Shown here in pieces: positions 1,496 through 57,545 of a stretch of 64,000 nucleotides of DNA. Below the pieces are notes generated by a model. It saw nothing but the letters and a program-made list of their open reading frames with translations, searched no databases and was not told the origin of the DNA. Position 1 is the first letter of the stretch, and each line of letters opens with the position of its first letter. The position numbers were made by a program, and so were the translations under genes. The stretch covers positions 159,507 through 223,506 of IMG/VR virus record IMGVR_UViG_3300038465_000091; one strand, written 5' to 3'.

Positions 1496-2947
1496 ATGAG
1501 CAAGTTGATGGAGCAACGCAAAGCGGCACGAACAAAGAAGTCAACGGTTCTTTTGTCCATCGATACGGCTAAGGATGCAGTCAATATCGGTAAGTCGCTG
1601 TTGAACGCAACCCAAGCTGAGGGTCAAAATGATCCGCAACTGGAACAAGCTGTAAGGCACTTGGAAGGGCTGTTAGCTAGTCAGCCAGATCAAATGCAGT
1701 CAGAAGGGGCAGTGAACGTCGAAGATTATTTCGACGATACTATTTTGCCTGAAGTAGCACGTCAAGCCAAAAACGAGGTAGATATGATCGCACAAAAACG
1801 CAGGGAAGCACGTCCCGCACAAGGAACTCAGCAACAGCCAGCTTTGGCATCGGATGAGAAATCCGCAGCCACGGGCACCGATGCTTTCGTGACCGACCGC
1901 GACGAATCGGGTAACCCCAAGACCCCCGAAAAGGCCGAAGTTCCCCGTCTCGCAGCCAAGAAGAAAGAAGCACAGCCCGAAGCTGTGCCCCCAGTCCCTC
2001 CCGTCGCAGCCCCAGCCGTTGGTGGGGGTGGTGGTTCGCTCGACGCCCTCTTCGCCAAGCTGCCGTCTGACTTCCTCGCCGATCTGGTGAAGAAGCTGAC
2101 CAGCCTCGAAGGTTTTGAACAGGACAAGGACGTACAGGCAGCCGTTGAGAATTTGGCTGGAAAACTCCAGCAACGTCCTGTTGAAGCGGCTCCCGTTCCC
2201 GGTGCTCCTGCCGCTGCTCCGACCGCCTCCGTAAAGAAGGGCGGCGACTTTGGCGGTAAGCAAGCTCCTCCGTTCGGTAAGAAAGACGATGACAAAAAGG
2301 ACGACAAGAAAGCATCCGTTGCCCGTCTTGGTTTGAATTTTGTCGCAGCCGAAAAGGTTGCCGTAGCCCCTCCGGGTCGCGAAGATCAGGTGAAGGCACT
2401 CAAGAAAGAAGACGTAGATAACCCCTACGCCGTGGCATGGGCCAGCTACAACAAAGGCGACAAGCAGGGCGCTCTTCGGGCCGCTCATGCGGTGATCGCG
2501 AAGTTCGCTGCCGCTGGTTTCTTCACGTGGGATCAGGCAACTGGCGACGTAACTGAGTCTGGCGGACGCACTCCAGAAGTTCAAGAAGCACACAGCAAGA
2601 TTGATGAAGCTCCCGCCCATCTGGAACGTCCTGATACGACGCTCCCGATCAAATTAGCAGGCGAGATGACGGCTCAAAAAGCTGTAAAGGAGGCGGAAAG
2701 GCTAGGCAACGAGCTTAAAAAGACCTACCTTGACGCCAAATCAATCTGTACGGTGAACGATAGCCGTCCAGTACGTGAGTTTGTAGAGAGTATCTTCCGT
2801 GCGGGCGACATGGCTGATGAGGCGGTTAAGACCCTCAACAAGCAAGTCATGCAGGAAGAATCCGAAGAAGCGGCTGCAAAAGTCCGTGAGAAGAGCAATA
2901 AGAAGTCCGCTCTCAACGATTTAACGTTGGCAGCTTCGGCTGAGTAA
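1496..2947 (+). CDS. Putative internal head protein with K-x-A motifs
   Basis: GAGGA RBS then ATG at 1496. Charged/Ala-Pro-rich; contains EKSAA, KKKEAQ, KKAS, EKVAV, DKQG, KKSA and the motifs DAFVTDRDESGNPK and APPGREDQVKALKK..VDNPYAVAW. Confidence 0.65.
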   Translation: MSKLMEQRKAARTKKSTVLLSIDTAKDAVNIGKSLLNATQAEGQNDPQLEQAVRHLEGLLASQPDQMQSEGAVNVEDYFDDTILPEVARQAKNEVDMIAQKRREARPAQGTQQQPALASDEKSAATGTDAFVTDRDESGNPKTPEKAEVPRLAAKKKEAQPEAVPPVPPVAAPAVGGGGGSLDALFAKLPSDFLADLVKKLTSLEGFEQDKDVQAAVENLAGKLQQRPVEAAPVPGAPAAAPTASVKKGGDFGGKQAPPFGKKDDDKKDDKKASVARLGLNFVAAEKVAVAPPGREDQVKALKKEDVDNPYAVAWASYNKGDKQGALRAAHAVIAKFAAAGFFTWDQATGDVTESGGRTPEVQEAHSKIDEAPAHLERPDTTLPIKLAGEMTAQKAVKEAERLGNELKKTYLDAKSICTVNDSRPVREFVESIFRAGDMADEAVKTLNKQVMQEESEEAAAKVREKSNKKSALNDLTLAASAE

Positions 2948-5681: not shown

Positions 5682-6584
5682 ATGCCTTTTACGAAGATAG
5701 CTAACGCTGCGTTACAAGAACCAGTCATCGCACCCGAGGACTGGATCAAGCTGCATGGAAAGCACGTGTTCGGGCAGAAGTCCGCCTCGGGCTCCGCAGC
5801 CGCCGCTACCTTCAGGAAGTCCGCTGACACCTCGAAATACCTCTTGTCCCACTGCACCATTATGGCAAGTGTGATGGTCGAGGCCGACCCTTACGATTAC
5901 CTAATCAAGCCAGAATGCAGTCACCTCGTCAACAACAACGATGACGCATGGACGAACGAAGTTCTGAAGCTCAGCCACAGCAGCTTTGTTGGTGCTTTCA
6001 ACTTCGTGGAACATTTCCAGAATTCCAAGTATGCGAAGGGTCACATTCTCGACGCCATTCTTCGCAAGATCAAGTTGAACGGCGATGGCTCTGTGTGGGT
6101 CTATTTCTGCGATATCCTTGTCGCCACGGACCTCGGACACGAGAAGCTGATTGACGACATCCGCAGCGAAAAGGTCAAGTACCTGAGTATGGGCTGCGTG
6201 ACCGACCTCGTAATTTGCAGCTATTGCGGTGCTCGCGTCACCGATCAAAATACCTACTGCAACCATCTGTCGTATCAAAAGGGCATGTTCCTGACCGACG
6301 ACGATGGCATTGCACGTCGTGTCGCCGAGCTTTGTGGGCACAAGACAATGGAAAACGGCGGCGTGAAGTTTGTGGAAGCTTCGTGGGTTGCTACACCAGC
6401 ATTCCCCGGGGCTGCAAAACGTAACACGGTCTCCGAAGAGTGGGAAGGACCCCGCACCAAGTACACCAAATCGTCCACCGCTGGGAAGATGGCAAAAATT
6501 GCCAGTGTGAATGATGAATTCGAAACCCTTAATCTAGGTGATGCGTTAATGAACGCGAATTTGCACGGAAGGTTGACTCGGTAA
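5682..6584 (+). CDS. Prohead (capsid maturation) protease with Zn-binding insert
   Basis: VNNNDDAW...FNFVEH...KGHILDA...YLSMGC...CSYC...CNH...FVEASWVATPAFPGA fits the HK97/herpes-type Ser-His protease pattern; sits directly upstream of scaffold, decoration and capsid genes. Confidence 0.75.
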   Translation: MPFTKIANAALQEPVIAPEDWIKLHGKHVFGQKSASGSAAAATFRKSADTSKYLLSHCTIMASVMVEADPYDYLIKPECSHLVNNNDDAWTNEVLKLSHSSFVGAFNFVEHFQNSKYAKGHILDAILRKIKLNGDGSVWVYFCDILVATDLGHEKLIDDIRSEKVKYLSMGCVTDLVICSYCGARVTDQNTYCNHLSYQKGMFLTDDDGIARRVAELCGHKTMENGGVKFVEASWVATPAFPGAAKRNTVSEEWEGPRTKYTKSSTAGKMAKIASVNDEFETLNLGDALMNANLHGRLTR

Positions 6585-9043
6585 TGGCCGATCAGAAGAC
6601 AACGCACTACAATGGCTACACTCTGAGTTACGCCAGTCAGCATGAGTCAGTGATTATTAAGTTGGACGGCAAGAAAGTTAAAACAGCACCAAACCTAGAA
6701 AAGGCGAAGGCGTGGGTGAATCAAGCGCCGGGAAGCTTTAGTAAGGGCGAGAAAAAGGCTGGTACGCTAATGGCAAAAGAAATAGTTCATTGCACAAAGT
6801 GCGGCAACATGATCGAGTCGCTCAAGCCTGAAAAATGTGAGCATTGTGGTGGCAAAGCAAAAGTTAAGAAGGGCTCTATGAAATCAAAACTAGCAGCAGC
6901 AAAAGCGGCACTTGACCGCAAGCAGGCCGATTTGGACGCTATTGACGACCAGATCATGGGTCTGGACTCTGGTATCCCAATGGATGCCCCATCTACCCCC
7001 GAATTTGACCTCCTCACTGCGAAGCGCGAAGAGCTTGAAGAAGAGATTCGCACGATGCGCGAAGGCGTTCAGTTTATCTCCGAGTGGGAAAAATTGAAGG
7101 GCGGACAGTGGTCGGAAGGTATCAAATCCCAGTTGGACGGCCTCGACTCAGAAATCGCCAATATAGCTGGCAGCGAGGGTGCCGTTGAGTCGGGTATGGA
7201 TATGGGAGCCCCGATGGGCGATCCCCTAGCCGCCCCGCCAGTTCCCGAAGCCCCAGTAGCACCAATGGGAGACGTGGCCCCTGAAGCCGCCCCAGCACCA
7301 GAAGTGGCACCCGATGCCGCCGCACCAGAAACACCCGCACCTGCCTTGGAACCTCCGATGGCGAGCGCAAAATCCGCAGTAAATAAGAAAAATAACTATC
7401 AAACCTCTCAAAAGAGGGGCAATATTGCCTCTCCCCAGATGAAAAAGGAAGGCTCCAACATGGCAAATCCTACAGCTACCAAGCCCTCGAACTTGAAAGA
7501 GAAGCTTGCTGAACTGAAAACGAAGCGCGAGACGATCAAGAGGGAAGCACAGGTTCGCACCGCTGCGGCGTATACAATCGCCAACACGATGCTGCCGGGT
7601 GCCCCCGTCGAAAAGCGTCAGGCATTCGCCTCTTCGCTACTCCAAGGTAACGACACCAAAGCCCTCGTTGCTGCCCTCCGTCAAACCGCGATCAACGCCC
7701 ACTACTCCAAGGTCGCCGAACAATTCAAGGAAGTCCACAAAGTCGAACTCAATGATCTCCTCGAAGACCCGTCCGTTCTGAAGTCCGAGCGTTCGGCTGT
7801 CGAAAAGGAAATCAAGGGTGACGCGAAGTCGGCTACCTCGAAGAAGGCCGATGACCGCAAGGACGCAGGTCCGCAGACCGAGACGTACAACGACGGTCGT
7901 GGTTGCGGCGGCGGGACTCACTCTGAGCCGAAGGAAATGGAAGCCTCGAAAGCTGGCGACCGTCCCGACGCTGGCGAGAAGCCCGGTCAGACCGTGAACC
8001 TCAGCGACGGCAAATCTGCCGCCGCAAAGAAGTCAACATGCAAGGACGGCGAGAAATGCGCGGGTTGCGAGAACTGCAAGTCCGCCGCCAAGAAAGCCGC
8101 CGAGAAGAAATGCGACAAGTGCAAGGGTGAATGTAAGTGCGCTTCCAAGGTCGTTGCCAAGGCAAAGAAGGCCGACGAGCCGCCGATGGACGCCCCCGCA
8201 CCAGATGCAGGCGCACCGCCGATGGAAGACGAAATGGGCGATGCAGGTGCTCCGTTGGATGAAGTTCCTCCGATGGACGGTATGGAAGGTGAAGCTCCAG
8301 TCGATGACGCTGGCGCGATCCTTACCGACGAGAAGAAGATGGTCGTTCAGGAGGAAATCGACACCGTTAAGGATGCCGTTCAAGCTCTTGAGCAGGAACT
8401 TCTTGAAGAGAACGAAGAAGAGATTCCGCTTGCTCTTGAAGAAGGCGAACCCTCCGAAGAAGAGCTTGACCTTTCGTCCGTGTTCGATCAGGGCGAGATG
8501 GAAGACAAAGCCGCTTCGCTTGCCAACGAAGGTGAAGATCACACCGCTGGCGACGACGGCGATGGTAACTTCTTCGCCCCAACATCTGCCGCAGGCATGG
8601 AATCAGTGCTTGACGACAGCGGTATGCAGGTAGCCAGTATCGAGAGCTATTTCGATATGCAGGGCTCCGATGCCGACCCACTGTACAGCTTGATCGCATC
8701 TGAAACCAAGGAAGCAGCATCCGTCGCTGGTTTTGACGTGCTTGAGTCCTTCACTGGTGAAGTGGCGAACAAGATGAAGCAGGACACCACTGGCGAAGCC
8801 CGCGACAACGAAGGCGACCACGACGAAGACCTCTTCGTCGAAGCAATGAAGGACATCAAGCCTGAGGAACAGGGTGCAAAGCGTACCCCGCAGGATGCAC
8901 GTCCCGAGTTGCAGGCTCCGAAGTCCGCAGCCGCAAAGACCGCAGCCAAGGCTCCCACAGGCAGCATCAAGCGTGTCCGCCCTGTCGTAGCCTCACCGAA
9001 AGCCGTTGACATCGCTACCGCGTTGTTCGGCTCCGAAGAGTAA
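6584..9043 (+). CDS. Capsid scaffolding / prohead core protein
   Basis: Coupled to the protease gene (TAATG); very acidic, coiled-coil and low complexity; canonical position between protease and capsid. Confidence 0.65.
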   Translation: MADQKTTHYNGYTLSYASQHESVIIKLDGKKVKTAPNLEKAKAWVNQAPGSFSKGEKKAGTLMAKEIVHCTKCGNMIESLKPEKCEHCGGKAKVKKGSMKSKLAAAKAALDRKQADLDAIDDQIMGLDSGIPMDAPSTPEFDLLTAKREELEEEIRTMREGVQFISEWEKLKGGQWSEGIKSQLDGLDSEIANIAGSEGAVESGMDMGAPMGDPLAAPPVPEAPVAPMGDVAPEAAPAPEVAPDAAAPETPAPALEPPMASAKSAVNKKNNYQTSQKRGNIASPQMKKEGSNMANPTATKPSNLKEKLAELKTKRETIKREAQVRTAAAYTIANTMLPGAPVEKRQAFASSLLQGNDTKALVAALRQTAINAHYSKVAEQFKEVHKVELNDLLEDPSVLKSERSAVEKEIKGDAKSATSKKADDRKDAGPQTETYNDGRGCGGGTHSEPKEMEASKAGDRPDAGEKPGQTVNLSDGKSAAAKKSTCKDGEKCAGCENCKSAAKKAAEKKCDKCKGECKCASKVVAKAKKADEPPMDAPAPDAGAPPMEDEMGDAGAPLDEVPPMDGMEGEAPVDDAGAILTDEKKMVVQEEIDTVKDAVQALEQELLEENEEEIPLALEEGEPSEEELDLSSVFDQGEMEDKAASLANEGEDHTAGDDGDGNFFAPTSAAGMESVLDDSGMQVASIESYFDMQGSDADPLYSLIASETKEAASVAGFDVLESFTGEVANKMKQDTTGEARDNEGDHDEDLFVEAMKDIKPEEQGAKRTPQDARPELQAPKSAAAKTAAKAPTGSIKRVRPVVASPKAVDIATALFGSEE

Positions 9044-12694: not shown

Positions 12695-12732
12695 AGTTAT
12701 TCATCTACCTAACCATTAGGTGGGGGCGTCTT

Positions 12733-21046: not shown

Positions 21047-24000
21047 ATGAAGCTGGACGCCACACAAGCGGCGGCTGCCAAGCTTTCCCACCTAATCGAG
21101 CCCGGGCGAACCGTCTATTCCACAGACGGCCACGCCTATAGGGTCTTGTCAAAGATCGCCGCTGGCGGCTCCTTGAGCTTCCGACTTGCGAACCTTCAGG
21201 GACAGCCGGTTCCAATCCCCGCAGACTTCTCCCCGATTGACGGGGCTCGGATGCGTTTCGCGTCCTTCCTGAAGTTCGCATTCAACAAAGACCTCACTGC
21301 GATTGTCAACTCACTGATTGAACAGGCGGGGCTCCCCACTGACCCAGCGATGAACTGGGCTGGGTGGTTTCAAAAGGTCTATGGCGAAATCCTAGCATCT
21401 GTTACCCCCAACTTTGATCTCCAAGACGAGATCATGTACAACACCGTCATTAAGCTCCTGATGATGCGTAAGGACAAGGACGGAAAAACACTTCTGGAAA
21501 ACGCTGCCGACAAAATTTCAGGTTTGTCCAGCGGCATTAACAAGATAAAGCGTCAACTTCGTGATCCGAACTTGACTCCAGACGAAAAGAAGACGCTAGA
21601 GAATCGACTCCACTGGCAGGAAAAAGTTAAGGCTGATCCTGTGGAGAAACAAGTCAGCAGCCTCCTGAAGAAAACTTTCGAGTATTACGCACGACATCAT
21701 GCTCGTGTGGATGCGAAAAATTACGCCTATTCGGTGCATACCCCCAGCCATCGCCTCGAAACGGAAAATATCGAAGACGTTGCTATCGAACAACCCACAC
21801 CATCTGGAGAGGGAACGTATAATATCCTTGATACCGAGGAACACGGCGTGGCTCCGGGCGTCGGACTGGGCGAGTCCGAACGCGACATCATGCAGTTCAT
21901 CGATCAATTCCAAGAGTGGGTGAGGGGCAAGGAGACCCCGAAATCCGCTCCTAACTATGCCGAATTGCTCAGGATTTACTGGGATCAGGCACAGCGAATT
22001 GACGATGTTAAGATCAGCGATCTGACTCAAGAGTGGATTCGCCGCACAGGTTTGAGCTTTGACTCCCTGAAGCAGTATCGGGATAAGCTCGGCATCCTGA
22101 TTCGAGATTTCGTCTACGAGAACAAAGTCCAACTGGGCAACTCCTACAAGTTCGTGGACTTGCTAAAGCACATGTTCCCGCCGCCAAAGCAAAAAGCACG
22201 TCCCGCCAAGGCTTCGTCCGACCACCATCACGACCGAACCGAATGCAGAAAGTGCGGCAATGTCCAGACTTGCCGTTGCCCTGCGACCAAGGTCACGTCC
22301 TATGTGGCTTCCTGCGACAACTGCAAGACGGCGGATGGTTTGGAAGCACGAGTGCTTGATCCGAACTGTCCTGAATACAAAAAATACGCCGATGATTTGA
22401 TCCGTCGCTTCGGTCAGACATCGCAGGTCTCCGAGATGCTGGGACAATTCGAAGATGAGCATTTCCCCACTTGTGTACACTGCCAGCAATACAATCAGGA
22501 TTGGCGGGCAGGTAAGGTATCAGCGGCAAAACCCAAGTGCCCCCATTGTGGCTCTGACGATTACGGCTTGATGCCCACGGACTTCGAGACCGCCAAGTGC
22601 AATGGTTGCGGCAAGAACTGGAATCATGGCATCGTCAAGGGTATCAATGATCCGAAGGAAGCTGCTCGCACGGCGGATGATGAAGGAGGGGGTAAAACGT
22701 GCGAAAATTGTGGGAGTTATTACGGTGGGTATACATGTCTTAATTGTGGGCGAAAAAAGAAGCTGGAAGAAGAGGTAGATCGTACCAGCAAGGAACTCAA
22801 GAAGTTCCCCAAGGGACCAACAGGCATGACGCCCGACGATGTGAAGGCTACTCCCGAATGGCAGGCGGCTAAACGTAATTACGGTCAAGCCTTCGCCAAG
22901 CTGCGAGAGTTCAATTCCAAAAAGTGTGCTGCCGATGATCCGACTCGTGACACCCTTGACGAGACGCTGAAGTATGACAACCCAGACAAGGACACCAAGG
23001 GGTTCCACGACCCCGCCGACCTCGGTCAATGCGCCTGTGAGTGGGATGAATGTCCGCTGGGTCACCAAGCGGGTGGGTGCCAGAATCCCGCAGCCCACAT
23101 GCTTGAAATCTATGGATACAAAACCCGCTACTGCCAGCCATGCACCGACGCAACTATCGAGTACATCCGATTGGAACAAGGCACTGGCGATCCCGATGAC
23201 ACGGTTAAGATTCTGTCCTCCGCACATACTGCTGGTGCCCCGTACTGCGACGGTTGTGATCGTCTGAAGGCAAACTGCATCTGCGAAGGCTGCGAGTGCC
23301 CAGAAAATAAAAACGCAGGCAAGTGGGGCGATAAAATCAAGAAGATGGAAGCTCGACGTGGCGAGTTCATCGAGAAAACTCTTAAGAATGCCGTAGGGCC
23401 AACGGAAGAGGATGATCTTGAGATGGCTAGGCGTGGTCCGATTCAATACGAGGAACTACCCGAAATGGAAACCCGAATTCGCCCACGAGAAGAACAGTCG
23501 AAATTTCCGACTCCTCGACCTACTACACGGCGTAAGGAGGGGATGCTCGGTCATGATTTTGTGGATGCCGATCAGCAAGCGATTCGCCCCGACATTACGC
23601 CGGGTGACACTGGGCGCTTACCTCATGGACGCACGCAGGGATCAGTTAAAGAATCTGCGGAACTTGCTGGTCGCGGCGGGGATAAAGATGACGTGCGCGG
23701 TGCGGGCGATCTGTGGCGTGAAGAGTTTTACCAAAGCGGCAATGCGCCCCCAAAGATTGCGACATCAGGTAAATGGAAAGTTCTTCTGCGGGATTCCAAG
23801 GGGAATCAGCGTGAGCAGGAGGTTTCAGGCGTAAATTACGGCTCTGCCGAACGTGCTGTGAGAAAATATATGAAGAATGGTGAAAGGGTTGTGTCGATGA
23901 CTATCGCAAGCAAGACGGCTGCCCCCGCTCCTGCGGCACCCGCACAGGCACAAGCACCAGCGCCCGCCCCAGCACCAGCAGCCACTCCCGCCCCTCCAGC

Positions 24001-26950
24001 GCAAGCGCCAAGCGCGAACACGGTAGTTGCCCCACCGCCCGGAACGCCGATTGCTCTTCCCTCGGGACAAGGAGAAGATACACCGGAAAAAAGAACAGTT
24101 CCGCCAGAAATCCCGAACAGGAAGTACCACATGACAAGTAAAAATTCCGCACTTAAAACCGAACAGAATACGCCAGAGATGGAAGCTCAGGTAGCTCAAC
24201 TGGCACAAACGAACCCGCTCACGGAGATTCACGAGAACTGCAACCCGTACTTCGAGCACGGGCAATGGTGGGTTGTCTGCGGGCCGTGCGGAGCCACTTG
24301 GTCGGTCGTTGATGTGGGTCAGTTCATCGGAGATGAGGGCGACATCGACCTTGAAGAGATTGATAACGGTGACGGTTCTTGTGCGGAGAATTTCCACGAG
24401 TCTGCCGATCACAGCAGCCCACGTCAGGGCTTCATCTATCAGGCGGAAATGTGGTGCCCGACTTGTGCGAAGGAGATCGCCGCCGACATTCAGAAGAACT
24501 ACCCTAAGCAGGTCCCCGCCGATCCAACGGATGAGTATTCTTATGATTCCGACAGCTACCCGAAGGGACCGTTCTTCGAGGAAGAATCAGACGCTCCTGA
24601 GCACTGCGCGGGCTGCCACATTTTCCTTGAGAACCCTCTGACCACGCATGGTCAGGAGTACATGCAGTCGATGGTTGACGAAGCTCTGGCGAAGGGACGC
24701 GGCGAAGAGCCGCACATCAAGGAATGGATGGACTTTTACGGCTATCATCCTGACACTGAGGGAGCCGAAGACGAACATGAGGCGTCCGCCGCTTCCGACA
24801 GAATCAATGCGATGCCGCAGCGTGGCAAGCCAAAGACTCCCGAAGAGTTGGGGCTGGTTGAGAAATCCGATACGGAACTCCGTCTTGAGGGGATTCCTCC
24901 GCGTCCTAAGAAAACCGCCGATGGCGCTTCGTTGCTTGAACCAGAAGTTAGCTTCGAAGATAAACCAGACCCCTTGCTCGACAACAGTAATAATTTGCAA
25001 AACTACAGCTATGCACCGCAGAAAGACACAACAGATAGTAGGGACACGGCCACGCTGGACGACAACATCGAAATTTTGAAACGTTACGGCTATGCCCTTT
25101 TCAGTGGTGGAAAATCGGGTGGGAAACAATTCTGGAAAAGTCCCATTGGAACTGTAGTTATCATGTCCACCAGCGGTGAGTGGATGTTTGGTGCGGACGG
25201 TACCAGAGGAACGACCAGCACGGATTTAGACAGTAAGCTTTTGAAATACCACCACAAAATGGTCCCAAAAGCGGGGGCGTCCAAAACCGCCGAAATTGAT
25301 ATGGGTCAGCTTGAGAGCGTGCAGGATCGAAAAGATCGCCTGAGCAAGCCCGACAAGAGTCCGATGTACGGCGTGACACTTCTTCGCGAACTTTCAGCCC
25401 CCGGCATTCCAAAGGGTGAAGTGATCGTGTTCGGTTATTACTACCCAGATGGGCAATGGGGCAAGCAGCAGCTTCAATGGTGGACAACGATGGCGAAGAC
25501 CGAGTATGATAGCACCGTCACTCAGGTCAAACGTCGCAGTCGCGGTACGAATCAGGAAAAGTCAACGGCCCTGTACGAGTCGTTGAAAGGACGTGGTACG
25601 GCGGTTGAGCCGGGTACGTCGTCTGACGCTATCATCGAGCAATTCAAGACGCAGAAGGAATCATCCATGGAAAACAAACAGGCTGCAATCGCACAACCCA
25701 CGTCTGGCGAGGACGAAGGCTATTACGTCAAGGTCACCTACACTAAGGGCGGTATTGATCTGAGCCCGACTGAGAATCTTCTAAGGGAAGTCGCCGAGGA
25801 GCAAATGCAGGATGAAAGCGGCAACTCGACTTATGAGTTCGCCCACAACATTGAGCTTGACGACATCTGGGAAATGATGGAGGATTTCTTCACCAATGGC
25901 TGGGAGAAAGTAAATCCCGAGGATATTGGTGCGCTAACTGACGGAGAAATCTTCTCCGATCCCAACGGCAACGTCTACTGGCATGAGCGGTATCAGATCG
26001 AAAGCATGACCGATGAACTGAAGGCAGGCAACACGGTGTTCATGCAGTACGGCGGCAATCTGTTCGATGAGGAAGATGAAGAAACGCCTGCTCCCGATCC
26101 GAACCAGATGAACCTCCCACTCCAGTCTTCCAAGAAGGAAGCCACGGGCGAGATGAGTCAGTCCGAGGCTGATGACCGTGAGGCATGGCCGATGCACCAC
26201 GCTATCGCTGACGCTCTGGGCGGCACGGTCAAGGCTTTTGACCAGTATCAAGGTCCGTACGTTCTTGTGGGCTCTGAGGCTCGCGGACAGGGCACCTATG
26301 CTCCCGCAATCCCGATGAAGGGTACCGTGCGCCTCTGGGTACAGGCGGACGAGGGTAGTGACGGGGCATTCCTGACCGTCTACAACGAAGACAACGATAA
26401 AGTTAGCGAGCCGTTCCATTGGGAAGACATGGAAGGCGCGGTCAATGCCGCCATGAGCGTAATGGGCGATGAGCCCGAGACAATCGAAGCCTCCACCAAG
26501 CAGGCGGAACTTGACATCCCCAAACCGGACAGTTGGGGGTGTACTTGTTCAGATAAAGGAGCACGCGGACAACACAAGTCCAATTGTCCTAAGGCTCCGA
26601 AGCAACGTGGCGAGTACCACGGCGCGAGTAAGCAAGCAGCGCCCGGCGACGGTGGACTACAACGCGACGTGCAGAACCAGTACGAGAACCACCCCCTGAT
26701 CGAAATGCTGTGGGGTTCCCTGAAACGTGACCCAGCGAACAAAGATCGCGTCCAGACGGCATGGGGCACCAAGACGAAGCAGGGTTTGGTGCTCAGTGTA
26801 GCTCGCGCCATGAAGGAAAGCCCCGTCTCGGGTAAAGAAAGCAGTCAGAAATGCAAATGCGGCAAACCGACAGCTAAAGGCGATCACCGCTGCGAGGACT
26901 GCCGCTCAAAACAGCATTCCGAGGCAGAAAAAGCGACTGGCGTAGAATAA
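21047..26950 (+). CDS. Giant mosaic polyprotein 1 (1967 aa), putative virion cargo
   Basis: AAGGAGG RBS; about 390-aa helical N-terminal domain followed by more than 20 short unrelated modules (many CxxC) separated by KTA/KEA/KQA/KES/HES/HEA. Confidence 0.75.
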   Translation: MKLDATQAAAAKLSHLIEPGRTVYSTDGHAYRVLSKIAAGGSLSFRLANLQGQPVPIPADFSPIDGARMRFASFLKFAFNKDLTAIVNSLIEQAGLPTDPAMNWAGWFQKVYGEILASVTPNFDLQDEIMYNTVIKLLMMRKDKDGKTLLENAADKISGLSSGINKIKRQLRDPNLTPDEKKTLENRLHWQEKVKADPVEKQVSSLLKKTFEYYARHHARVDAKNYAYSVHTPSHRLETENIEDVAIEQPTPSGEGTYNILDTEEHGVAPGVGLGESERDIMQFIDQFQEWVRGKETPKSAPNYAELLRIYWDQAQRIDDVKISDLTQEWIRRTGLSFDSLKQYRDKLGILIRDFVYENKVQLGNSYKFVDLLKHMFPPPKQKARPAKASSDHHHDRTECRKCGNVQTCRCPATKVTSYVASCDNCKTADGLEARVLDPNCPEYKKYADDLIRRFGQTSQVSEMLGQFEDEHFPTCVHCQQYNQDWRAGKVSAAKPKCPHCGSDDYGLMPTDFETAKCNGCGKNWNHGIVKGINDPKEAARTADDEGGGKTCENCGSYYGGYTCLNCGRKKKLEEEVDRTSKELKKFPKGPTGMTPDDVKATPEWQAAKRNYGQAFAKLREFNSKKCAADDPTRDTLDETLKYDNPDKDTKGFHDPADLGQCACEWDECPLGHQAGGCQNPAAHMLEIYGYKTRYCQPCTDATIEYIRLEQGTGDPDDTVKILSSAHTAGAPYCDGCDRLKANCICEGCECPENKNAGKWGDKIKKMEARRGEFIEKTLKNAVGPTEEDDLEMARRGPIQYEELPEMETRIRPREEQSKFPTPRPTTRRKEGMLGHDFVDADQQAIRPDITPGDTGRLPHGRTQGSVKESAELAGRGGDKDDVRGAGDLWREEFYQSGNAPPKIATSGKWKVLLRDSKGNQREQEVSGVNYGSAERAVRKYMKNGERVVSMTIASKTAAPAPAAPAQAQAPAPAPAPAATPAPPAQAPSANTVVAPPPGTPIALPSGQGEDTPEKRTVPPEIPNRKYHMTSKNSALKTEQNTPEMEAQVAQLAQTNPLTEIHENCNPYFEHGQWWVVCGPCGATWSVVDVGQFIGDEGDIDLEEIDNGDGSCAENFHESADHSSPRQGFIYQAEMWCPTCAKEIAADIQKNYPKQVPADPTDEYSYDSDSYPKGPFFEEESDAPEHCAGCHIFLENPLTTHGQEYMQSMVDEALAKGRGEEPHIKEWMDFYGYHPDTEGAEDEHEASAASDRINAMPQRGKPKTPEELGLVEKSDTELRLEGIPPRPKKTADGASLLEPEVSFEDKPDPLLDNSNNLQNYSYAPQKDTTDSRDTATLDDNIEILKRYGYALFSGGKSGGKQFWKSPIGTVVIMSTSGEWMFGADGTRGTTSTDLDSKLLKYHHKMVPKAGASKTAEIDMGQLESVQDRKDRLSKPDKSPMYGVTLLRELSAPGIPKGEVIVFGYYYPDGQWGKQQLQWWTTMAKTEYDSTVTQVKRRSRGTNQEKSTALYESLKGRGTAVEPGTSSDAIIEQFKTQKESSMENKQAAIAQPTSGEDEGYYVKVTYTKGGIDLSPTENLLREVAEEQMQDESGNSTYEFAHNIELDDIWEMMEDFFTNGWEKVNPEDIGALTDGEIFSDPNGNVYWHERYQIESMTDELKAGNTVFMQYGGNLFDEEDEETPAPDPNQMNLPLQSSKKEATGEMSQSEADDREAWPMHHAIADALGGTVKAFDQYQGPYVLVGSEARGQGTYAPAIPMKGTVRLWVQADEGSDGAFLTVYNEDNDKVSEPFHWEDMEGAVNAAMSVMGDEPETIEASTKQAELDIPKPDSWGCTCSDKGARGQHKSNCPKAPKQRGEYHGASKQAAPGDGGLQRDVQNQYENHPLIEMLWGSLKRDPANKDRVQTAWGTKTKQGLVLSVARAMKESPVSGKESSQKCKCGKPTAKGDHRCEDCRSKQHSEAEKATGVE

Positions 26951-26992: not shown

Positions 26993-28147
26993 ATGGCAAA
27001 CAAAGTGAAGAAGGCAAATCGTGAGACCGTCCGTAAGGCTATCGTAGCCCGTCGCGAAGCTCGCAAGCAGGAAAAAGCCGCGAATTATGCAAAAATGCGC
27101 GAATGCGCGAAGTCTCCAGCGAAGTTCGCCAAGGCCCTTGACGAGCTTGTAGCGAAGACCGCACGTCAAGCCTACAGCATGGACGCCCTCCGCGAAAATC
27201 TCGGATTGGTGAAATTTGCCAAGGAAGTTCCCGCCAAGGTCCGCATCGCCGCCGCTAAGAATTACGGCAAGAAGTTTGTCCGTATCGCCGAAGAGCAGCC
27301 AGACATTCTGGCTGACGCCCTCCAGCAAGCCTACAAGGGCTTGGATGAGCAGGCAGCGGCCATGGAAATCGCCGCCGAAGCTCTGGGTATCGATCTGGGT
27401 GCCTCGCCTGCTGAGAAGGCATTCACCGACGAAGGCAAGCACGAACTTGAGCTTGGCGAAGACAAGGGCGAAGAGAAAGCGACAGAAGAAGGTCCTGATT
27501 TCGGAGCCGAAGAAGAGACCGAAGCGGAAGAAGGGGCCGATAAATTTGTATCGGATTCTGAAGCGGAGGCCGAACCTTTGCCCGAGGAAGATAAAGAAGC
27601 CAGTGGTTCCGACGCTTTTAGCACCGACCGCGACGAAGGTGGGTCGCCGAAAGCACCACAAAAGACTCAGAGCCCACAGGCTCAGGGCGAAGCGGCAAAG
27701 CAGTCGGCAGCGCAAGGCGCTGGCAAATTCGTAAAGGAAATCCCGCAGGCTCAGGGAAAGACAGCGGTCACCGAAGCAAAGCATTGTCCCGAGTGTAAAT
27801 ACCCGGGGAGAACGGTTGAACCTGAGACTGGCAAATGCCGTCATTGCAAAAAGAAAGTGATGGAGCCGTTCGACAAGAAGGCCGCAATGGGCAAGAAAGA
27901 TTTCATCGCCTTGGCGGATGCAATCAAGAACATGAGCGTTGGACCTGATGAGAAGCGAAATATCGCTGAAGGTCTGTGCGAGACGTTTCGCGCATCCAAC
28001 CCACGTTTCATGAAAGATCGTTTCATGGACTACGTTATGGGCCTCGGCGGTTCGAGTGGCGGTAAGGTGAAGCCGCAAGGAACGCCACGCCCGCGCAAGG
28101 GCGTCATTGATCCGTATGCTAGTGCTGGTGGGCATCCTTTGGAGTAA
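26993..28147 (+). CDS. Putative internal head protein
   Basis: AGGAG RBS; shares DAFSTDRDEGGSPK with ORF 1496; after KKAA carries the module MGKKDFIALADAIK...NPRFMKDRF. Confidence 0.65.
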   Translation: MANKVKKANRETVRKAIVARREARKQEKAANYAKMRECAKSPAKFAKALDELVAKTARQAYSMDALRENLGLVKFAKEVPAKVRIAAAKNYGKKFVRIAEEQPDILADALQQAYKGLDEQAAAMEIAAEALGIDLGASPAEKAFTDEGKHELELGEDKGEEKATEEGPDFGAEEETEAEEGADKFVSDSEAEAEPLPEEDKEASGSDAFSTDRDEGGSPKAPQKTQSPQAQGEAAKQSAAQGAGKFVKEIPQAQGKTAVTEAKHCPECKYPGRTVEPETGKCRHCKKKVMEPFDKKAAMGKKDFIALADAIKNMSVGPDEKRNIAEGLCETFRASNPRFMKDRFMDYVMGLGGSSGGKVKPQGTPRPRKGVIDPYASAGGHPLE

Positions 28148-54831: not shown

Positions 54832-54832
54832 C

Positions 54833-55457: not shown

Positions 55458-57545
55458 ATGGCAGACGAGAAGAAACCGTACAGCAGCATCGTTGACGCAT
55501 TCTTGGACGACCGCGAGCCCGAATGGAAGGACCTCGGCTTGAAGGACGCACAGGACTCAGGCGAGGAACAGTTGGATCGCTCTCACCAGTACGTCGATAA
55601 AGAGTTTGTGGACGAGATCGCGGAATCCGCCTCTCACCACACCCCTCTGTGGCCCGCTCGCACGGGCTCTGCCGAGAAGAATGCTCAGCGAGAACGTCTG
55701 GAGCGTGCCCGTGGCACCCACTTGGACCGCATGACAGCCAAGGATCAGCACTTTAGCGGCGTCGGTGGTTCGGATCAGAACTGGCGTGTACAGGCTACTC
55801 AGCACCCCGAAGATTACAGCACGAAGCTGGGCGACGACGATTCGCTGTTCGCGGAAGTTACGGAAACGTTGGAATCAGCAGCCTCATCGGGCAAGGTTGA
55901 GAAGAAGAACGTGTCGGACGCACAGGTTCAGAACTACGTCCACGCCCTGCTCAATCAGGGCATGGCACCTTCGAAGATCGCCGCGAAGCTCAAGAAGCTG
56001 GCTGAGATTGAGTTATTCAATCACCAGATGGCGACTCAGTACCTACAAGAAAATGCGGGACTCGTTGGGATGGCGTTCCTAGAGCCCAATACCTACATGG
56101 ACAAAAACTCCCCGACTTATGAACGAGAGAAGCACGGCAGCGCAGGTGAGAACAAGGAATTTGATACAAGTACAGTCGAAGGTCTCAAGGCAGCGGAGAG
56201 CTATAAGTCGAGGCTAGAAAATAAATACGATAGCGTTATCACTAAGTCTATCGGTCTCGACCGCGTTCGAATTACTGGAGGTCCATCCAAACAAGCAAGT
56301 TCGAGCAACGATTGCGTTCGTCAGCACGAGCAGTGGAAGAATGCGGGCATCACACCACGGGCGGCATCTGTAAAGCAGATCAGCGCGTGTACCGGATGTC
56401 AGTATTTCTCGAAGAACGGTAGCTCCAAGACCTGTGGTCTCTACCACTTACCAGTGGTGGGCAACACGGCTGAGCTTTCACCCATCGTGAACAAGCTGAC
56501 CGCAGGCGTGCCGAACAAGCAGAAGCGGGCGGCTTTGGTCCAGATCGCCAATGGCAATGGCACCAAGGTTGGTTCCATGCCCATCGCTCCGAAGACAAGC
56601 GCATCTGTCTCTCGTCACCCGAGTCTTGGCAGCGTAGAAGCGCAGGCGAAGCGCGTGGGCCGCACAGTAACGGCGGACTTCGATTCTTCGCACGTTGCAG
56701 CGTTGCATGAGAAGGGTCATTCGCTAAAGGCTATCTTCCGTGCGGCTGATAAACAGTTCGGTGCGTTTGCAGCAGGCAAGGCGCTACGTGAGTTCGTTGG
56801 CAGCCTGAGACCAAACGTCAATGGGCAGATCGTTCTCGCGAAAGTTGATGCGGAATTCCTCGCCAAGGCTGGGATGCATAATCAGAATTTTGTGGCGGGT
56901 GCAAAGTGTGCATCCTGTGCGACACATTCGGCGGCGGTGCAGAAGCACAAGTCAGCGGCGAATGTCGATTACATCTCTCGGGTTCCGCACACGGGATTCC
57001 AAGAGAGTAACCCCGATCAGGTACGTCACGCACACCGTGCGAGCAAACCCGAGCTTGATGCCAGCGTCATCGAGCGGTATCATAAGAAGGGGCACCCGCT
57101 GGAAAAGATTTACAAGCAGGCAGCGTCCAAGTTCGGCACCGCCCAAGCAAGCAAAGCCGTGAAGGAATTCATCGCCAGTCTGAAGCGTAAGCCAATCAAG
57201 GTTGCGCTGAGTCAGATCGACTGCTCGTTCCTTAAGAACAAACTGGCCGATCACAATCCGATTATTGGGGCACATAAGTGCGGCTCTTGTACGTATCGCA
57301 AAGGAATGCACTGCGGTCTGACGGGTGGTACGCTCTTGAGCTTCCCCGGTATGGACAAAACGTCGTCCAATCACAAGATTGGGGAAGGTGCGCCAGAGGA
57401 TGGGCGTACCATTCTTGCGGAGTTTGACTTGATGTCGAATTCAGGGCGTCCGGGCGACACGAAGATGGCCGACATCGAAATGAACACGGACAGACCCGAT
57501 GATACTCATCTGGGGAGTCATTTTGAAATGGGAGACATAGAGTAA
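55458..57545 (+). CDS. Putative head protein with a duplicated Zn-binding domain and K-x-A sites
   Basis: Internal repeat HEKGHSLKAIF..A.KQFG...A..EFV.SL...GAKCASC versus HKKGHPLEKIY..A.SKFG...A..EFI.SL...GAHKCGSC. Confidence 0.7.
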   Translation: MADEKKPYSSIVDAFLDDREPEWKDLGLKDAQDSGEEQLDRSHQYVDKEFVDEIAESASHHTPLWPARTGSAEKNAQRERLERARGTHLDRMTAKDQHFSGVGGSDQNWRVQATQHPEDYSTKLGDDDSLFAEVTETLESAASSGKVEKKNVSDAQVQNYVHALLNQGMAPSKIAAKLKKLAEIELFNHQMATQYLQENAGLVGMAFLEPNTYMDKNSPTYEREKHGSAGENKEFDTSTVEGLKAAESYKSRLENKYDSVITKSIGLDRVRITGGPSKQASSSNDCVRQHEQWKNAGITPRAASVKQISACTGCQYFSKNGSSKTCGLYHLPVVGNTAELSPIVNKLTAGVPNKQKRAALVQIANGNGTKVGSMPIAPKTSASVSRHPSLGSVEAQAKRVGRTVTADFDSSHVAALHEKGHSLKAIFRAADKQFGAFAAGKALREFVGSLRPNVNGQIVLAKVDAEFLAKAGMHNQNFVAGAKCASCATHSAAVQKHKSAANVDYISRVPHTGFQESNPDQVRHAHRASKPELDASVIERYHKKGHPLEKIYKQAASKFGTAQASKAVKEFIASLKRKPIKVALSQIDCSFLKNKLADHNPIIGAHKCGSCTYRKGMHCGLTGGTLLSFPGMDKTSSNHKIGEGAPEDGRTILAEFDLMSNSGRPGDTKMADIEMNTDRPDDTHLGSHFEMGDIE

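What the first reader, a model, noticed from the sequence alone, without database searches (positions are those of the whole stretch)
27780..28060. Cargo modules are also grafted onto mid-sized head proteins
Seen: ORF 26993 ends with a Zn ribbon and KKAA|MGKKDFIALADAIK...NPRFMKDRFMDYV, which keeps its own Met. ORF 55458 has an AT-richer insert, KHG-SAGENKEFDTSTVEGLKAAESYKSRLENKY...RVRITG-GPSKQA (about 56130-56298), interrupting its conserved-looking frame. The scaffold has two small N-terminal modules ending KKAG and KKGS. Inference: any protease-processed head protein can serve as a landing pad.
Basis: partly seen in the sequence, partly recalled or inferred. Interest (0 to 1): 0.6.

Follow-up and report, generated by a model that had tools for sequence, protein, structure and literature searches.

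The report
Swappable cargo cassettes in jumbo-phage proteins
In this soil jumbo phage, small protein modules, one of them elsewhere an independent phage gene, have been spliced in frame into larger proteins at short Lys-x-Ala junctions that look like cutting sites for the head-maturation protease, so the phage probably packs them as pre-made cargo.

Summary

**Shown by comparison with relatives**
- ORF 26993-28147 (384 aa) has a conserved helical N-domain, an acidic linker and conserved short motifs, followed by two add-ons.
- The first add-on is a 39-aa CxxC...CxxC zinc-ribbon cassette. Only 1 of 34 aligned orthologues has it, but it sits 92% identical inside an unrelated protein of a related phage.
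- The second add-on is a three-helix module. In most other phages it is a free-standing 60-75-aa gene that starts at the same Met.
- ORF 55458-57545 carries a 53-aa insert at 56139-56297 with 45.9% GC against 55.5% for the gene. Its 91%-identical orthologues lack the insert. Orthologues whose host parts are only 35-57% identical carry it at 86-88% identity.
- That site is a hotspot holding 0 to about 390 aa of shuffled cassettes.
- Almost every junction reads [K/R/H]-x-[A/G].

**Inferred, not shown**
- The junction motif is enriched in the scaffold-position protein and in both giant ORFs, and it is conserved near both ends of the prohead protease in 39 orthologues.
- Cleavage by that protease, head location and delivery as cargo all rest on this indirect evidence; no proteomics exists for this lineage.
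- "Any head protein" goes further than the data allow.

This is a new variant of known cargo and polyvalent-protein systems.

The parts
26993..28147 (+). P0001, a 384-aa carrier-plus-cassettes protein and the target of the finding
   Evidence: Translation. 48 homologues, aligned as A1.
26993..27415 (+). Conserved N-terminal helical domain (residues 1-141), the only part shared by all family members
   Evidence: A1. AlphaFold2 model with pLDDT 79.7, made of long helical hairpins. Homologous to residues 489-630 of Tunturi_5 gp345.
27593..27601 (+). K201-E-A203. K201 is invariant within an otherwise variable acidic linker. Putative cleavage site just before the SGSDAF..TDRD motif.
   Evidence: K201 invariant and E202 at least 90% conserved in A1.
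27602..27658 (+). SGSDAFSTDRDEGGSPKAP linear motif ('TDR motif') of unknown role, present in variable copy number in orthologues
   Evidence: D212, R213 and P219 are invariant. Within this genome the motif occurs only here and in the ORF at 1508-2947.
27728..27757 (+). FVKEIPQAQG linear motif, repeated 0-3 times in orthologues
27755..27766 (+). G-K-T-A junction upstream of the zinc-ribbon cassette
   Evidence: The equivalent junction in P0049 reads DKKA|.
27767..27883 (+). 39-aa zinc-ribbon cassette VTEAKHCPEC...CRHC...EPFDKKA (Cys265, 268, 282, 285)
   Evidence: Present in P0001 and in P0009 only among the 35 aligned family members. The same cassette, 92% identical, is inserted in P0049, an orthologue of the unrelated ORF at 1508-2947. 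GC is 51.3%.
27875..27886 (+). K-K-A-A junction in front of the module's Met
   Evidence: Every orthologue that carries the module has K-x-(x)-A or G directly before the M(S/T)(K/R)(K/R)D start. The codons differ between orthologues and give no consistent Shine-Dalgarno sequence.
27887..28045 (+). Three-helix module MGKKDFIALADAIK...NPRF..RFMDYVMG, elsewhere a free-standing small phage gene
   Evidence: 76 IMG/VR loci encode it, most as 60-75-aa ORFs that start at this Met. 14,336 cluster representatives match at E <= 1e-3. AlphaFold2 model with pLDDT 83.6. No Pfam family; no Foldseek match in the PDB with E <= 0.001.
28046..28144 (+). Gly/Pro/Lys-rich C-terminal tail (GGSSGGKVKPQGTPRPRK...)
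   Evidence: pLDDT is low.
55458..57545 (+). P0002, a 695-aa conserved protein of this phage group with an insertion hotspot
   Evidence: 106 homologues, aligned as A2. Its Tunturi_5 orthologue is gp348.
56130..56138 (+). K-H-G junction at the upstream edge of the insert. This is the empty-site motif in the closest orthologues.
56139..56297 (+). 53-aa insert ('module A'), SAGENKEFDTSTVEGLKAAESYKSRLENKYDSVITKSIGLDRVRITGGPSKQA, ending in the K-Q-A junction
   Evidence: Absent from the 643-aa orthologues (P0053 is 91% identical over the host parts). 86-88% identical to the inserts of P0082 and P0084, whose host parts are only 35-57% identical. GC is 45.9% against 55.5% for the gene.
1508..2947 (+). 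Third landing-pad protein (P0050; the likely start is Met42 of the longest frame). It has a conserved KSA|ATGTDAFVTDRD site at about 1859-1930.
   Evidence: Orthologues P0049 and P0357 carry different Cys-rich cassettes at exactly this site, each with the KKA flank duplicated.
5682..6584 (+). Prohead (head-maturation) protease, the proposed enzyme that cuts at K-x-A
   Evidence: phrog_18299, E 4e-15. K-x-A is conserved near the N-terminus in 39 of 39 orthologues and about 30 aa before the C-terminus in 37 of 39. The catalytic core holds only 0.0068 such motifs per residue.
6584..9043 (+). 819-aa protein in the scaffold position. Two N-terminal mini-modules, 6584-6763 ending KKAG and 6764-6877 ending KKGS; the second is a zinc ribbon.
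   Evidence: The first ~290 aa are absent from Tunturi_5 gp332. The junction motif occurs 13 times against 3.3 expected.
21047..26950 (+). Giant 1967-aa ORF directly upstream of P0001 (context). The junction motif is enriched in it.
   Evidence: 9 motifs against 2.3 expected. Its N-terminus is homologous to Tunturi_5 gp345 residues 22-150.
58086..63773 (+). Giant 1895-aa ORF downstream of P0002 (context). The junction motif is enriched in it.
   Evidence: 13 motifs against 3.3 expected. In Tunturi_5 the gene in the corresponding position (two genes after the P0002 orthologue) is annotated as DarB-like; homology was not tested.

Best explanation
**Context.** The window belongs to a jumbo myophage of at least 223 kb, related to Tunturiibacter phage Tunturi_5 and more distantly to Bacillus phage G.

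**Architecture of P0001 (26993-28147).**
- The constant part is a carrier: a helical N-domain, an acidic linker, and conserved linear motifs (K-E-A, SGSDAF.TDRD, FV..IPQAQG).
- Behind the carrier, lineage-specific cassettes have been joined in frame.
- In this phage the cassettes are a 39-aa zinc ribbon and a three-helix domain. The three-helix domain descends from a free-standing early-region phage gene of about 65 aa and still begins with that gene's Met.

**The same process in other proteins.**
- P0002 (55458-57545) has one site, ...YE[R/H]TA|S... or ...EKHG|S..., that accepts 0 to about 390 aa of shuffled cassettes.
- The ORF at 1508-2947 and the scaffold-position ORF show the same kind of additions.

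**Junctions.** Nearly every cassette junction, and the empty sites themselves, read [K/R/H]-x-[A/G].

**Shown:**
- the in-frame modularity;
- the exchange of cassettes between distant or unrelated host proteins;
- the free-standing origin of the three-helix module;
- the junction motif.

**Inferred mechanism:**
- K-x-A is the recognition site of the phage's assemblin-type prohead protease.
- The carriers are built into the prohead.
- The protease then cuts at every junction, so each cassette is freed as a small protein inside the capsid and enters the host together with the DNA.
- A pre-existing cleavage site is a safe landing pad, because an insert that brings a second copy of the site is excised after assembly and leaves the host protein's mature pieces unchanged.
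For: **Phage identity and gene order**
- The major capsid protein is 71% identical to that of Tunturi_5 and 35% identical to that of phage G.
- Protease, scaffold-position ORF and capsid gene lie in the same order as in Tunturi_5.

**Modularity of P0001**
- The zinc ribbon is present in only 2 of 35 aligned family members.
- The three-helix module is present in 24 of 35 and absent from the 11 most distant.
- The zinc ribbon is 92% identical in P0049, an orthologue of a different protein, where it is inserted cleanly between DKKA| and TGAGAFVTDRD.
- P0201 is a P0001-type carrier with other cassettes.

**Free-standing origin of the three-helix module**
- 76 IMG/VR loci encode it. Most are 60-75-aa ORFs that start at the module's Met and have a GGAG-type ribosome-binding site.
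- They lie among small ORFs near primase, phosphoesterase and terminase genes.
- 14,336 cluster representatives match, and nearly all of the top 150 are 60-110 aa long with the module at residues 1-3.

**Hotspot in P0002**
- The insert is absent from the 91%-identical orthologues.
- It is 86-88% identical in orthologues whose host parts are 35-57% identical.
- At least 10 recurrent cassette types occur there in different combinations.

**Junction motif**
- It ends within 3 residues of the cassette core in 8 of 8 contexts of type B, 11 of 11 of type C, 2 of 3 of type E, 2 of 3 of type F and 2 of 2 of type F2.
- It ends within 3 residues of the point where the host sequence resumes in 46 of 63 contexts.
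- The background rate is 0.048 per position.
- It precedes the module start in all module-bearing P0001 orthologues.
- It is duplicated on both sides of the inserts in P0049 and P0357.

**Link to the protease**
- K[STEQKA]A[ADESTVM] is about 4-fold over shuffle expectation in the scaffold-position ORF, both giant ORFs and ORF 3962-5653.
- K-x-A is conserved near both termini of the protease in 39 orthologues but rare in its core.
- Prohead proteases of giant phages are known to cut themselves and internal head proteins at a short motif, AXE in SPN3US (PMC10052503).

**Protein-level selection**
- The junction codons vary, and the middle residue varies among T, K, S, E, Q, H, M and L.
Against: - No virion proteome or N-terminal mapping exists for this phage group. 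The Tunturi_5 paper used predicted annotation only, and phage G has no detectable homologue of P0001 or P0002.
- Head location is inferred from gene neighbourhood and the shared motif alone.
- The motif is short, with a background of about 5% per position in these Lys/Ala-rich sequences. It was partly defined on the same proteins in which enrichment was then measured.
- Some junctions deviate, for example YKA|S and KSS|S.
- K-x-A also occurs inside conserved helices, where cleavage is unlikely.
- The co-folding test of protease with P0001 residues 192-232 gave no verdict.
- None of the cassettes examined here (zinc ribbon, three-helix module, module A) has a known function, so "cargo" describes logic rather than a demonstrated activity.
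Confidence: 0.55

Rival explanations
1. These are ordinary multidomain (polyvalent-type) proteins that act uncut. K-x-A is then just the typical composition of flexible Lys/Ala-rich linkers between domains, not a protease site.
For: - Some packaged polyvalent proteins, such as the N4 virion RNA polymerase, are delivered unprocessed (PMC5512222).
- The motif has a high background rate of 0.048 per position.
- There is no cleavage evidence, and the co-folding test gave no verdict.
Against: - The motif sits 1-3 residues from cassette cores across unrelated cassette types.
- K201 is invariant in an otherwise variable linker.
- The site is duplicated when a cassette is inserted.
- The motif is conserved at both protease termini but rare in the protease core.
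- It is enriched over composition-preserving shuffles, which argues against a pure composition effect.
Confidence: 0.25
2. The C-terminal module of P0001 is still expressed on its own from its retained Met. In that case the K-K-A-A codons (AAG AAG GCC GCA) are a relic of, or still function as, a ribosome-binding site, and the fusion is incidental.
For: - All module-bearing protein orthologues keep the Met.
- A weak GAAGG lies 5 nt upstream of ATG 27887.
- The module is a free-standing gene elsewhere.
Against: - Other fused orthologues have junction DNA with no Shine-Dalgarno resemblance, such as AAC AAG CTT TCC GCG and AGT AAG ACT GCA.
- One relative (L021) has CTG (Leu) in place of the Met.
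- The internal cassettes in P0002 have the same junctions but no Met.
- The reading frame is kept open across the junction in more than 20 independent contigs.
Confidence: 0.1
3. The proteins are processed polyproteins but are not head cargo. They would be non-virion early or middle proteins, cut by another protease (host or phage).
For: - Virion association is untested.
- Stand-alone copies of the three-helix module lie in non-structural gene clusters.
- A block of about 25 kb of non-structural genes separates P0001 from P0002 in this phage.
Against: - P0001 follows the structural block that starts with protease, scaffold-position ORF and capsid gene.
- In Tunturi_5 its carrier domain is part of gp345, annotated as a virion structural protein, and a gene annotated DarB-like lies two genes after the P0002 orthologue.
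- The motif is shared with the protein in scaffold position and with the prohead protease termini.
Confidence: 0.1

Closest known systems
Polyvalent proteins of phages and conjugative elements (Iyer, Burroughs, Anand, de Souza, Aravind 2017; PMC5512222)
   Same: - Many unrelated small domains are strung together in one phage polypeptide and shuffled extensively between relatives.
- They are proposed to be packaged and delivered with the DNA, and to be released by proteolysis in the manner of viral polyproteins.
   Different: - None of the hallmark polyvalent domains (zincin-like metallopeptidase, ADP-ribosyltransferase, and others) was detected by Pfam in P0001, P0002 or the giant ORFs.
- Release would be by a trans-acting prohead protease at an explicit junction motif, not by embedded peptidases.
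- Mid-sized conserved proteins serve as hosts, each with a single defined insertion site.
T4 internal proteins and the capsid-targeting sequence cut by gp21 (own knowledge of the T4 literature)
   Same: - A targeting part carries an otherwise unrelated protein into the prohead.
- The prohead protease cuts it off at a short motif.
- The cargo is injected with the DNA.
- Foreign proteins can be swapped in behind the targeting part.
   Different: - The T4 targeting sequence is about 10 aa and the site is L/I-x-E. Here the carrier is at least 140 aa plus a linker and the putative site is K-x-A.
- Several cassettes lie in series, and there are internal insertion sites.
Propeptide processing of head and ejection proteins in phiKZ-like giant phages (SPN3US gp245, AXE motif; PMC10052503)
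   Same: - Giant-phage heads hold many internal proteins.
- The prohead protease cuts itself (removing a C-terminal propeptide) and cuts long N-terminal propeptides at several sites that share a 3-residue motif.
   Different: - The phage lineage and the motif differ (A-x-E against K-x-A).
- No combinatorial cassette hotspot has been described there.
- In SPN3US cleavage is measured; here it is only inferred.
MuF-domain polymorphic toxins of temperate phages (own knowledge)
   Same: A conserved head-associated N-terminal domain is fused to variable C-terminal effector modules that differ between related phages.
   Different: - No MuF domain is present here (Pfam).
- The modules are tiny and of unknown function.
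- Inserts also occur internally and are flanked by a junction motif.
Herpesvirus assemblin specificity, (V/L/I)-x-A|S (own knowledge; a lead, not a test)
   Same: - Phage prohead proteases are regarded in the literature as sharing the assemblin fold; the fold was not examined here.
- Ala at P1, often followed by Ser at P1', is what the junctions here show (ERTA|S, SKQA|S, KAA|SE in the protease tail).
   Different: - Here a basic residue lies two or three positions before the cut, not a hydrophobic one.
- Specificity is not measured.

Membership tests
Polyvalent proteins (Iyer et al. 2017) | Two to 15 distinct domains in one polypeptide encoded by a phage or conjugative element | tested here: met
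   P0001 has a helical domain, a zinc ribbon and a three-helix domain. Members of the P0002 family carry up to about 5 cassettes in one site.
Polyvalent proteins (Iyer et al. 2017) | Presence of the characteristic conflict or effector domains (zincin-like metallopeptidase, ADP-ribosyltransferase, nucleases, methylases, and others) | tested here: not met
   Pfam and PHROGs find none in P0001, P0002 or the two giant ORFs.
Polyvalent proteins (Iyer et al. 2017) | Packaged in the virion and delivered with the DNA | not testable with these tools
   No proteome exists for this lineage.
Prohead-protease substrates with targeting propeptides (T4 capsid-targeting sequence, phiKZ/SPN3US type) | A prohead protease is encoded in the same morphogenesis module | tested here: met
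   ORF 5682-6584 matches phrog_18299 with E 4e-15, lies next to the capsid gene and is syntenic with Tunturi_5.
Prohead-protease substrates with targeting propeptides (T4 capsid-targeting sequence, phiKZ/SPN3US type) | A short cleavage motif shared by the protease's own termini, the scaffold and the internal proteins | tested here: inconclusive
   K-x-A is shared, enriched and conserved at those places. Cleavage itself is not observed. The motif is not the known L/I-x-E or A-x-E.
Prohead-protease substrates with targeting propeptides (T4 capsid-targeting sequence, phiKZ/SPN3US type) | Demonstrated cleavage and presence of the mature fragment in heads | not testable with these tools
   This needs virion mass spectrometry or an in vitro protease assay.
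Zinc ribbon (CxxC...CxxC) | Two CxxC knuckles 10-20 residues apart | tested here: met
   C265-x2-C268 and C282-x2-C285. Only sub-threshold Pfam zinc-finger hits were found.
Unnamed family of free-standing ~65-aa phage proteins, M(S/T)KKDFI.LADAI...NP.F...W..YI.G | Significant sequence match over the whole three-helix domain to free-standing members | tested here: met
   tblastn E-values down to 1e-12 against free-standing ORFs. Profile search. The ESM Atlas nearest clusters are 54-72-aa viral proteins.
MuF polymorphic toxins | N-terminal MuF (SPP1 gp7-like) head domain | tested here: not met
   No Pfam hit in P0001 or P0002.
In-frame mobile DNA elements (inteins, Rickettsia-type palindromic elements) | Terminal inverted or direct repeats, target-site duplication at the DNA level, or intein splice-junction residues | tested here: not met
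   No meaningful terminal repeats flank either insert. The inserts are 39 and 53 aa long and start with V and S rather than the Cys of a typical intein; S228 alone does not exclude an intein, but at 53 aa the insert is far below intein size. No further intein motifs were sought.

The most novel reading that the evidence does not exclude
Jumbo phages of the Tunturi_5/G-like group run a natural plug-in cargo system.
- The recognition sites of an assemblin-type prohead protease with K-x-A|(S) specificity double as docking sites in internal head proteins.
- Free-standing early genes and mini-domains are captured there in frame, shuffled between phages, and so converted into pre-made proteins that are released inside the capsid and injected with the genome.
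- Each cassette travels together with one copy of the site, so the host protein matures unchanged.
Probability: 0.4. Interest if true: 0.75.

Novelty: new variant of a known kind. Interest (0 to 1): 0.62.

Why it matters
- If the junction motif is the protease site, these phages show how a virus can turn any small gene into injected cargo. The gene only has to be dropped into an existing cleavage site.
- That would explain the growth of the giant polyprotein-like ORFs in huge phages.
- It would give a candidate specificity (K-x-A) for an unstudied branch of prohead proteases.
- It would supply a catalogue of more than 10 cassette types, plus a family of over 14,000 clusters of small phage proteins, as candidates for very early host-takeover or anti-defence functions.
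- It would provide a natural template for loading foreign proteins into large capsids.
- Part of this is directly testable, because a cultured relative (Tunturi_5) exists. That phage lacks these cassettes but shares the protease, gp345 (carrier domain) and gp348 (the P0002 orthologue).

Tried and rejected
- **Family scans.** Pfam and PHROGs on whole P0001, P0002 and the giant ORFs gave nothing above threshold. Pfam on the isolated modules gave only sub-threshold zinc-finger hits. The three-helix module gave one weak hit to an internal stretch of phrog_2922, a family of unknown function.
- **Structure search.** Foldseek against the PDB found no match with E <= 0.001, either for the three-helix module or for the helical carrier domain. 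The carrier gave only generic coiled-coil rows.
- **Co-folding.** Protease with P0001 residues 192-232 returned no verdict, which is evidence neither for nor against binding.
- **Module A elsewhere.** The P0002 insert was not found in IMG/VR by pattern search plus tblastn. Whether it exists as a free-standing gene remains open.
- **Phage G.** It has no detectable homologue of P0001 or P0002, so its published virion proteome cannot be used. tblastn of P0001 against 50,697 phage records found nothing; a profile search was needed to find the Tunturi_5 domain.
- **Literature.** The Tunturi paper has no proteomics, and the passages of the phage G paper that matched protease and cleavage terms report no cleavage sites.
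- **Rejected: the junction as a ribosome-binding-site relic.** Junction codons vary and lack a Shine-Dalgarno sequence in other orthologues.
- **Rejected: a mobile DNA element.** Neither insert has flanking terminal repeats, and both are far below intein size.
- **Rejected: assembly artefact.** The same fusions recur in more than 20 independent contigs.
- **Rejected: the module moved to a nearby gene.** The module-less orthologue that was checked (P0038, locus L087) has no copy in the surrounding 12.9 kb.
- **Capsid protein N-terminus.** The K-T-A and K-L-A motifs there are conserved with Tunturi_5 but not clearly with phage G, so they are not used as evidence.
Full report
**What the window is.**
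- The 64-kb window is the last part of a 223.5-kb linear IMG/VR viral record, estimated 71% complete.
- Its major capsid protein (10983-11942) is 71% identical to that of Tunturiibacter phage Tunturi_5, a 309-kb jumbo myophage of Acidobacteriota. It is 49% identical to that of a 485-kb uncultured phage and 35% identical to that of Bacillus phage G.
- Gene order around it matches Tunturi_5: the ORF at 1508-2947, ORF 3962-5653, the prohead protease 5682-6584 (phrog_18299), an 819-aa ORF in scaffold position 6584-9043, and the capsid gene.
- P0001 (26993-28147) follows a 1967-aa giant ORF.
- P0002 (55458-57545) precedes a 174-aa ORF and a 1895-aa giant ORF.
- In Tunturi_5 the counterparts of P0001 and P0002 lie only about 1.3 kb apart (gp345 and gp348). 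Here a block of about 25 kb lies between them, holding glycosyltransferase, sugar-epimerase and tail-fibre-like genes.

**Checking the observation.**
- Refined coordinates are:
  - zinc-ribbon cassette, 27767-27883 (residues 259-297);
  - module with its own Met, 27887-28045 (residues 299-351);
  - P0002 insert, 56139-56297 (residues 228-280).
- The P0002 insert has 45.9% GC against 55.5% for the rest of the gene; only 2.6% of same-size windows are as low or lower.
- The two P0001 cassettes are also somewhat GC-poor, at 51.3% and 49.1% against 55.3% for the gene.

**P0001 compared with its relatives.**
- 48 homologues were found, all from metagenomes and none named.
- In the alignment of 35 family members, only the first ~140 residues are shared throughout. 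An AlphaFold2 model gives long helical hairpins with pLDDT 79.7, and it has no match with E <= 0.001 in the PDB.
- An acidic linker follows, then an invariant Lys within a K-E-A triplet.
- After that come short motifs in variable copy number: SGSDAF(V)TDRD..G.PK.P and FV..IPQ(A/S)QG.
- The zinc ribbon occurs only in P0001 and in P0009, which is 66% identical overall.
- The C-terminal module occurs in 24 of the 35 and is absent from the 11 most distant.
- The module-less relative that was checked has no copy in the 12.9 kb around its gene.
- In Tunturi_5 the helical domain is the C-terminal end of gp345 (residues 489-630; 29% identity, E 9e-11). The N-terminus of gp345 matches the N-terminus of the 1967-aa giant ORF (31% identity, E 4e-12).
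- So the giant ORF plus P0001 look like a greatly expanded and split version of one 668-aa protein.

**The zinc ribbon moves between unrelated proteins.**
- P0049 (669 aa) is an orthologue of the window's ORF at 1508-2947: 48% identical in the C-terminal part, 32% in the N-terminal part.
- It carries the same cassette at 92% identity, inserted cleanly between ...ASDKKA and TGAGAFVTDRD...
- The window's own protein reads ...ASDEKSA|ATGTDAFVTDRD... without it.
- In the 101 homologues of that protein, the (E)KK.A|xGxxAF.TDRD site is nearly universal.
- A second, different Cys-rich cassette sits at exactly the same place in P0357, flanked by SAKKA| and PSKKA|.

**The three-helix module is a captured gene.**
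- A scan of IMG/VR with the module profile found 76 loci.
- In the jumbo-phage relatives the module is fused behind a P0001-type carrier.
A stop codon lies a few codons upstream in frame, and a GGAG-type ribosome-binding site is present.
- These free-standing genes lie among small ORFs next to primase, phosphoesterase, RNA-ligase and terminase genes, which is a non-structural region.
- A profile search of 1.84 billion cluster representatives gave 14,336 hits at E <= 1e-3 and 616 at E <= 1e-10. Of the top 150, nearly all are 60-110 aa long with the module at residues 1-3. The few long hits are P0001-type carriers or tandem duplications.
- The family has no Pfam entry.
- The model is a three-helix bundle with pLDDT 83.6 and has no match with E <= 0.001 in the PDB.
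- The function is therefore unknown. Position and size fit a small early protein.

**P0002 has an insertion hotspot.**
- 106 homologues were found.
- The 643-aa orthologues lack the 53-aa insert; the nearest, P0053, is 91% identical over the host parts.
- P0082 and P0084 are only 35-57% identical in the host parts, yet they carry the insert at 86-88% identity.
- Extracting the segment between two conserved anchors in all homologues shows that the site accepts from 0 to about 390 extra residues.
- These residues form recurrent cassettes in different orders and combinations:
  - SFKVVMEENTSNAQRF...;
  - FNSQSELKQ...GDRVTI...;
  - TPVIFRKWKD...;
  - WLDDLKK...;
  - APYGP..NPPDDWE.CG.CGG...;
  - several zinc ribbons and others.
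- This is exchange of in-frame cassettes between phages, not slow divergence.
- No terminal repeats or target duplications were found at the DNA level.

**The junction motif.**
- The empty site reads ...YE[R/H]TA|S(G)SN.C... in most orthologues, and ...EKHG|S... in the clade of the window.
- Nearly every cassette is preceded by [K/R/H]-x-[A/G], for example KTA|, KKA|, KEA|, KQA|, RTA|.
- The motif ends within 3 residues of the conserved cassette core in all 8 distinct contexts of cassette B and all 11 of cassette C.
- The same holds for 2 of 3 contexts of E, 2 of 3 of F and 2 of 2 of F2. It also holds for 46 of 63 distinct contexts where the host sequence resumes.
- The background rate is 0.048 per position, which gives roughly a 0.18 chance of one motif ending in a 4-residue window (the last figure is my arithmetic).
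- The same motif precedes the module start in every module-bearing P0001 orthologue.
- It also flanks the zinc ribbon on both sides in all three contexts, precedes the TDR motifs (EKEA|SGSDAF), and ends the two N-terminal mini-modules of the scaffold-position ORF.
- The first ~290 residues of that ORF are missing from the Tunturi_5 orthologue.
- Junction codons differ between orthologues and the middle residue varies, so the constraint acts on the protein and not on a DNA recombination signal or a ribosome-binding site.

**Link to the prohead protease (inference).**
- A stricter form of the motif, K[STEQKA]A[ADESTVM], is about four-fold above composition-preserving shuffles in these proteins:
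  - the 1895-aa ORF, 13 against 3.3 expected;
  - the scaffold-position ORF, 13 against 3.3;
  - the 1967-aa ORF, 9 against 2.3;
  - ORF 3962-5653, 4 against 0.7.
- Most of the other ~200 ORFs of the genome show no such excess, although the 25 highest z-scores also include several ORFs with only 1-3 occurrences. One caveat applies: the motif was refined on some of these same proteins.
- An independent check used 39 distinct protease orthologues of 59-100% identity.
  - All have K-x-A, usually twice, within residues 21-75, in a loop of variable length.
  - 37 have K-x-A-(S/A/K) about 30 residues before the C-terminus.
  - The catalytic core holds only 0.0068 such motifs per residue.
- Prohead proteases of giant phages are known to trim their own ends and to cut internal head proteins at one short motif, AXE in SPN3US (PMC10052503).
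- From my own knowledge, herpesvirus assemblin, regarded as the structural relative of phage prohead proteases, cuts at x-A|S. The junctions here resemble that. This is a lead, not a test.

**Most likely mechanism.**
- Carriers with K-x-A sites are incorporated into the prohead.
- The protease cuts at each junction.
- Cassettes are set free inside the capsid and leave with the DNA.
- A cleavage site is a tolerant landing pad, because an insert that carries a second copy of the site is cut out after assembly.

My confidence differs by step:
- that the modules are grafted and exchanged, about 0.9;
- that K-x-A is the protease site, about 0.55;
- that the proteins are head cargo delivered to the host, about 0.45.

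**Rivals.**
- **Uncut multidomain proteins with Lys/Ala-rich linkers.** This cannot be excluded without proteomics. It fits poorly with the positional precision, the duplication of the site at inserts, and the conservation at the protease termini.
- **Independent translation of the module from its retained Met.** This is possible here, since a weak GAAGG lies 5 nt upstream. It is not general, because other orthologues lack any Shine-Dalgarno sequence, and one relative has Leu (CTG) instead of Met.
- **Processed but non-virion proteins.** This is not excluded.

**Comparison with what is known.**
- The logic matches polyvalent proteins (PMC5512222), T4 capsid-targeting fusions, phiKZ/SPN3US propeptide processing and MuF-fused toxins.
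- It differs in four ways:
  - a different putative motif;
  - a trans-acting head protease rather than embedded peptidases;
  - defined single-site hotspots in mid-sized conserved proteins;
  - documented capture of a free-standing gene family.
- The hallmark domains of polyvalent proteins and the MuF domain were looked for and not found. I therefore describe the system as working like those systems and do not file it as a member of either.

**Verdict.** This is a new variant of a known kind, of moderate-to-high interest.

Noticed in passing
window 21047-26950 and 26993-27415; Tunturi_5 gp345 (L006:5636-7639): Tunturi_5 gp345 (668 aa) joins the N-terminal domain of the 1967-aa giant ORF to the helical domain of P0001. 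In this phage, about 1,500 or more residues of extra Cys-rich modules, a stop codon and a 42-nt spacer lie between the two.
   Followed up: partly
window 54755-55453 and 12691-13629: GIY-YIG homing-endonuclease ORFs sit right next to cassette-bearing genes. One ends 5 nt before the P0002 start (no nucleotides shared with it). The other lies just downstream of the capsid gene and was confirmed by PHROGs. Such nucleases could promote the local recombination that moves the cassettes.
   Followed up: no
L021:3226-4219 (IMGVR_UViG_3300032770_000001, 455 kb): In this relative the P0001-type carrier ends with a stop (...GSL*). The three-helix module follows 10 nt later in another frame, with CTG (Leu) in place of the Met and a K-V-A motif before it. 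This could be a frameshifted fusion, a sequencing error or programmed frameshifting.
   Followed up: partly
window 27602-27658, 27728-27757 and about 1859-1930: Two conserved linear motifs, SGSDAF(V)TDRD..G.PK.P and FV..IPQ(A/S)QG, occur in variable copy number in two otherwise unrelated protein families, always just after a K-x-A site. Their role is unexplained; docking to the protease or capsid is one possibility.
   Followed up: partly
window 27887-28045; loci L019-L083: The three-helix module belongs to a very large family of ~65-aa phage proteins with no Pfam entry and no known function: 14,336 cluster representatives at 50% identity match at E <= 1e-3.
   Followed up: partly
window 1385-2947: The longest frame starts at GTG 1385, but a database protein identical over 479 aa indicates that the real start is Met42 at 1508.
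   Followed up: yes
window about 28600-54700: A block of about 25 kb separates P0001 from P0002. It holds glycosyltransferases, nucleotide-sugar epimerases and a tail-fibre-like gene, with many genes on the minus strand. The orthologues of P0001 and P0002 lie about 1.3 kb apart in Tunturi_5, so this block looks like a large accessory insertion.
   Followed up: no
protease orthologues L102, L107, L108, L113, L128, L130, L137, L155 (N-terminal loop): Some orthologues of the prohead protease carry a short insertion, RGC.(I/L)DGDHPFC, directly before the conserved N-terminal K-x-A site. This is another small Cys-containing addition next to the motif.
   Followed up: no
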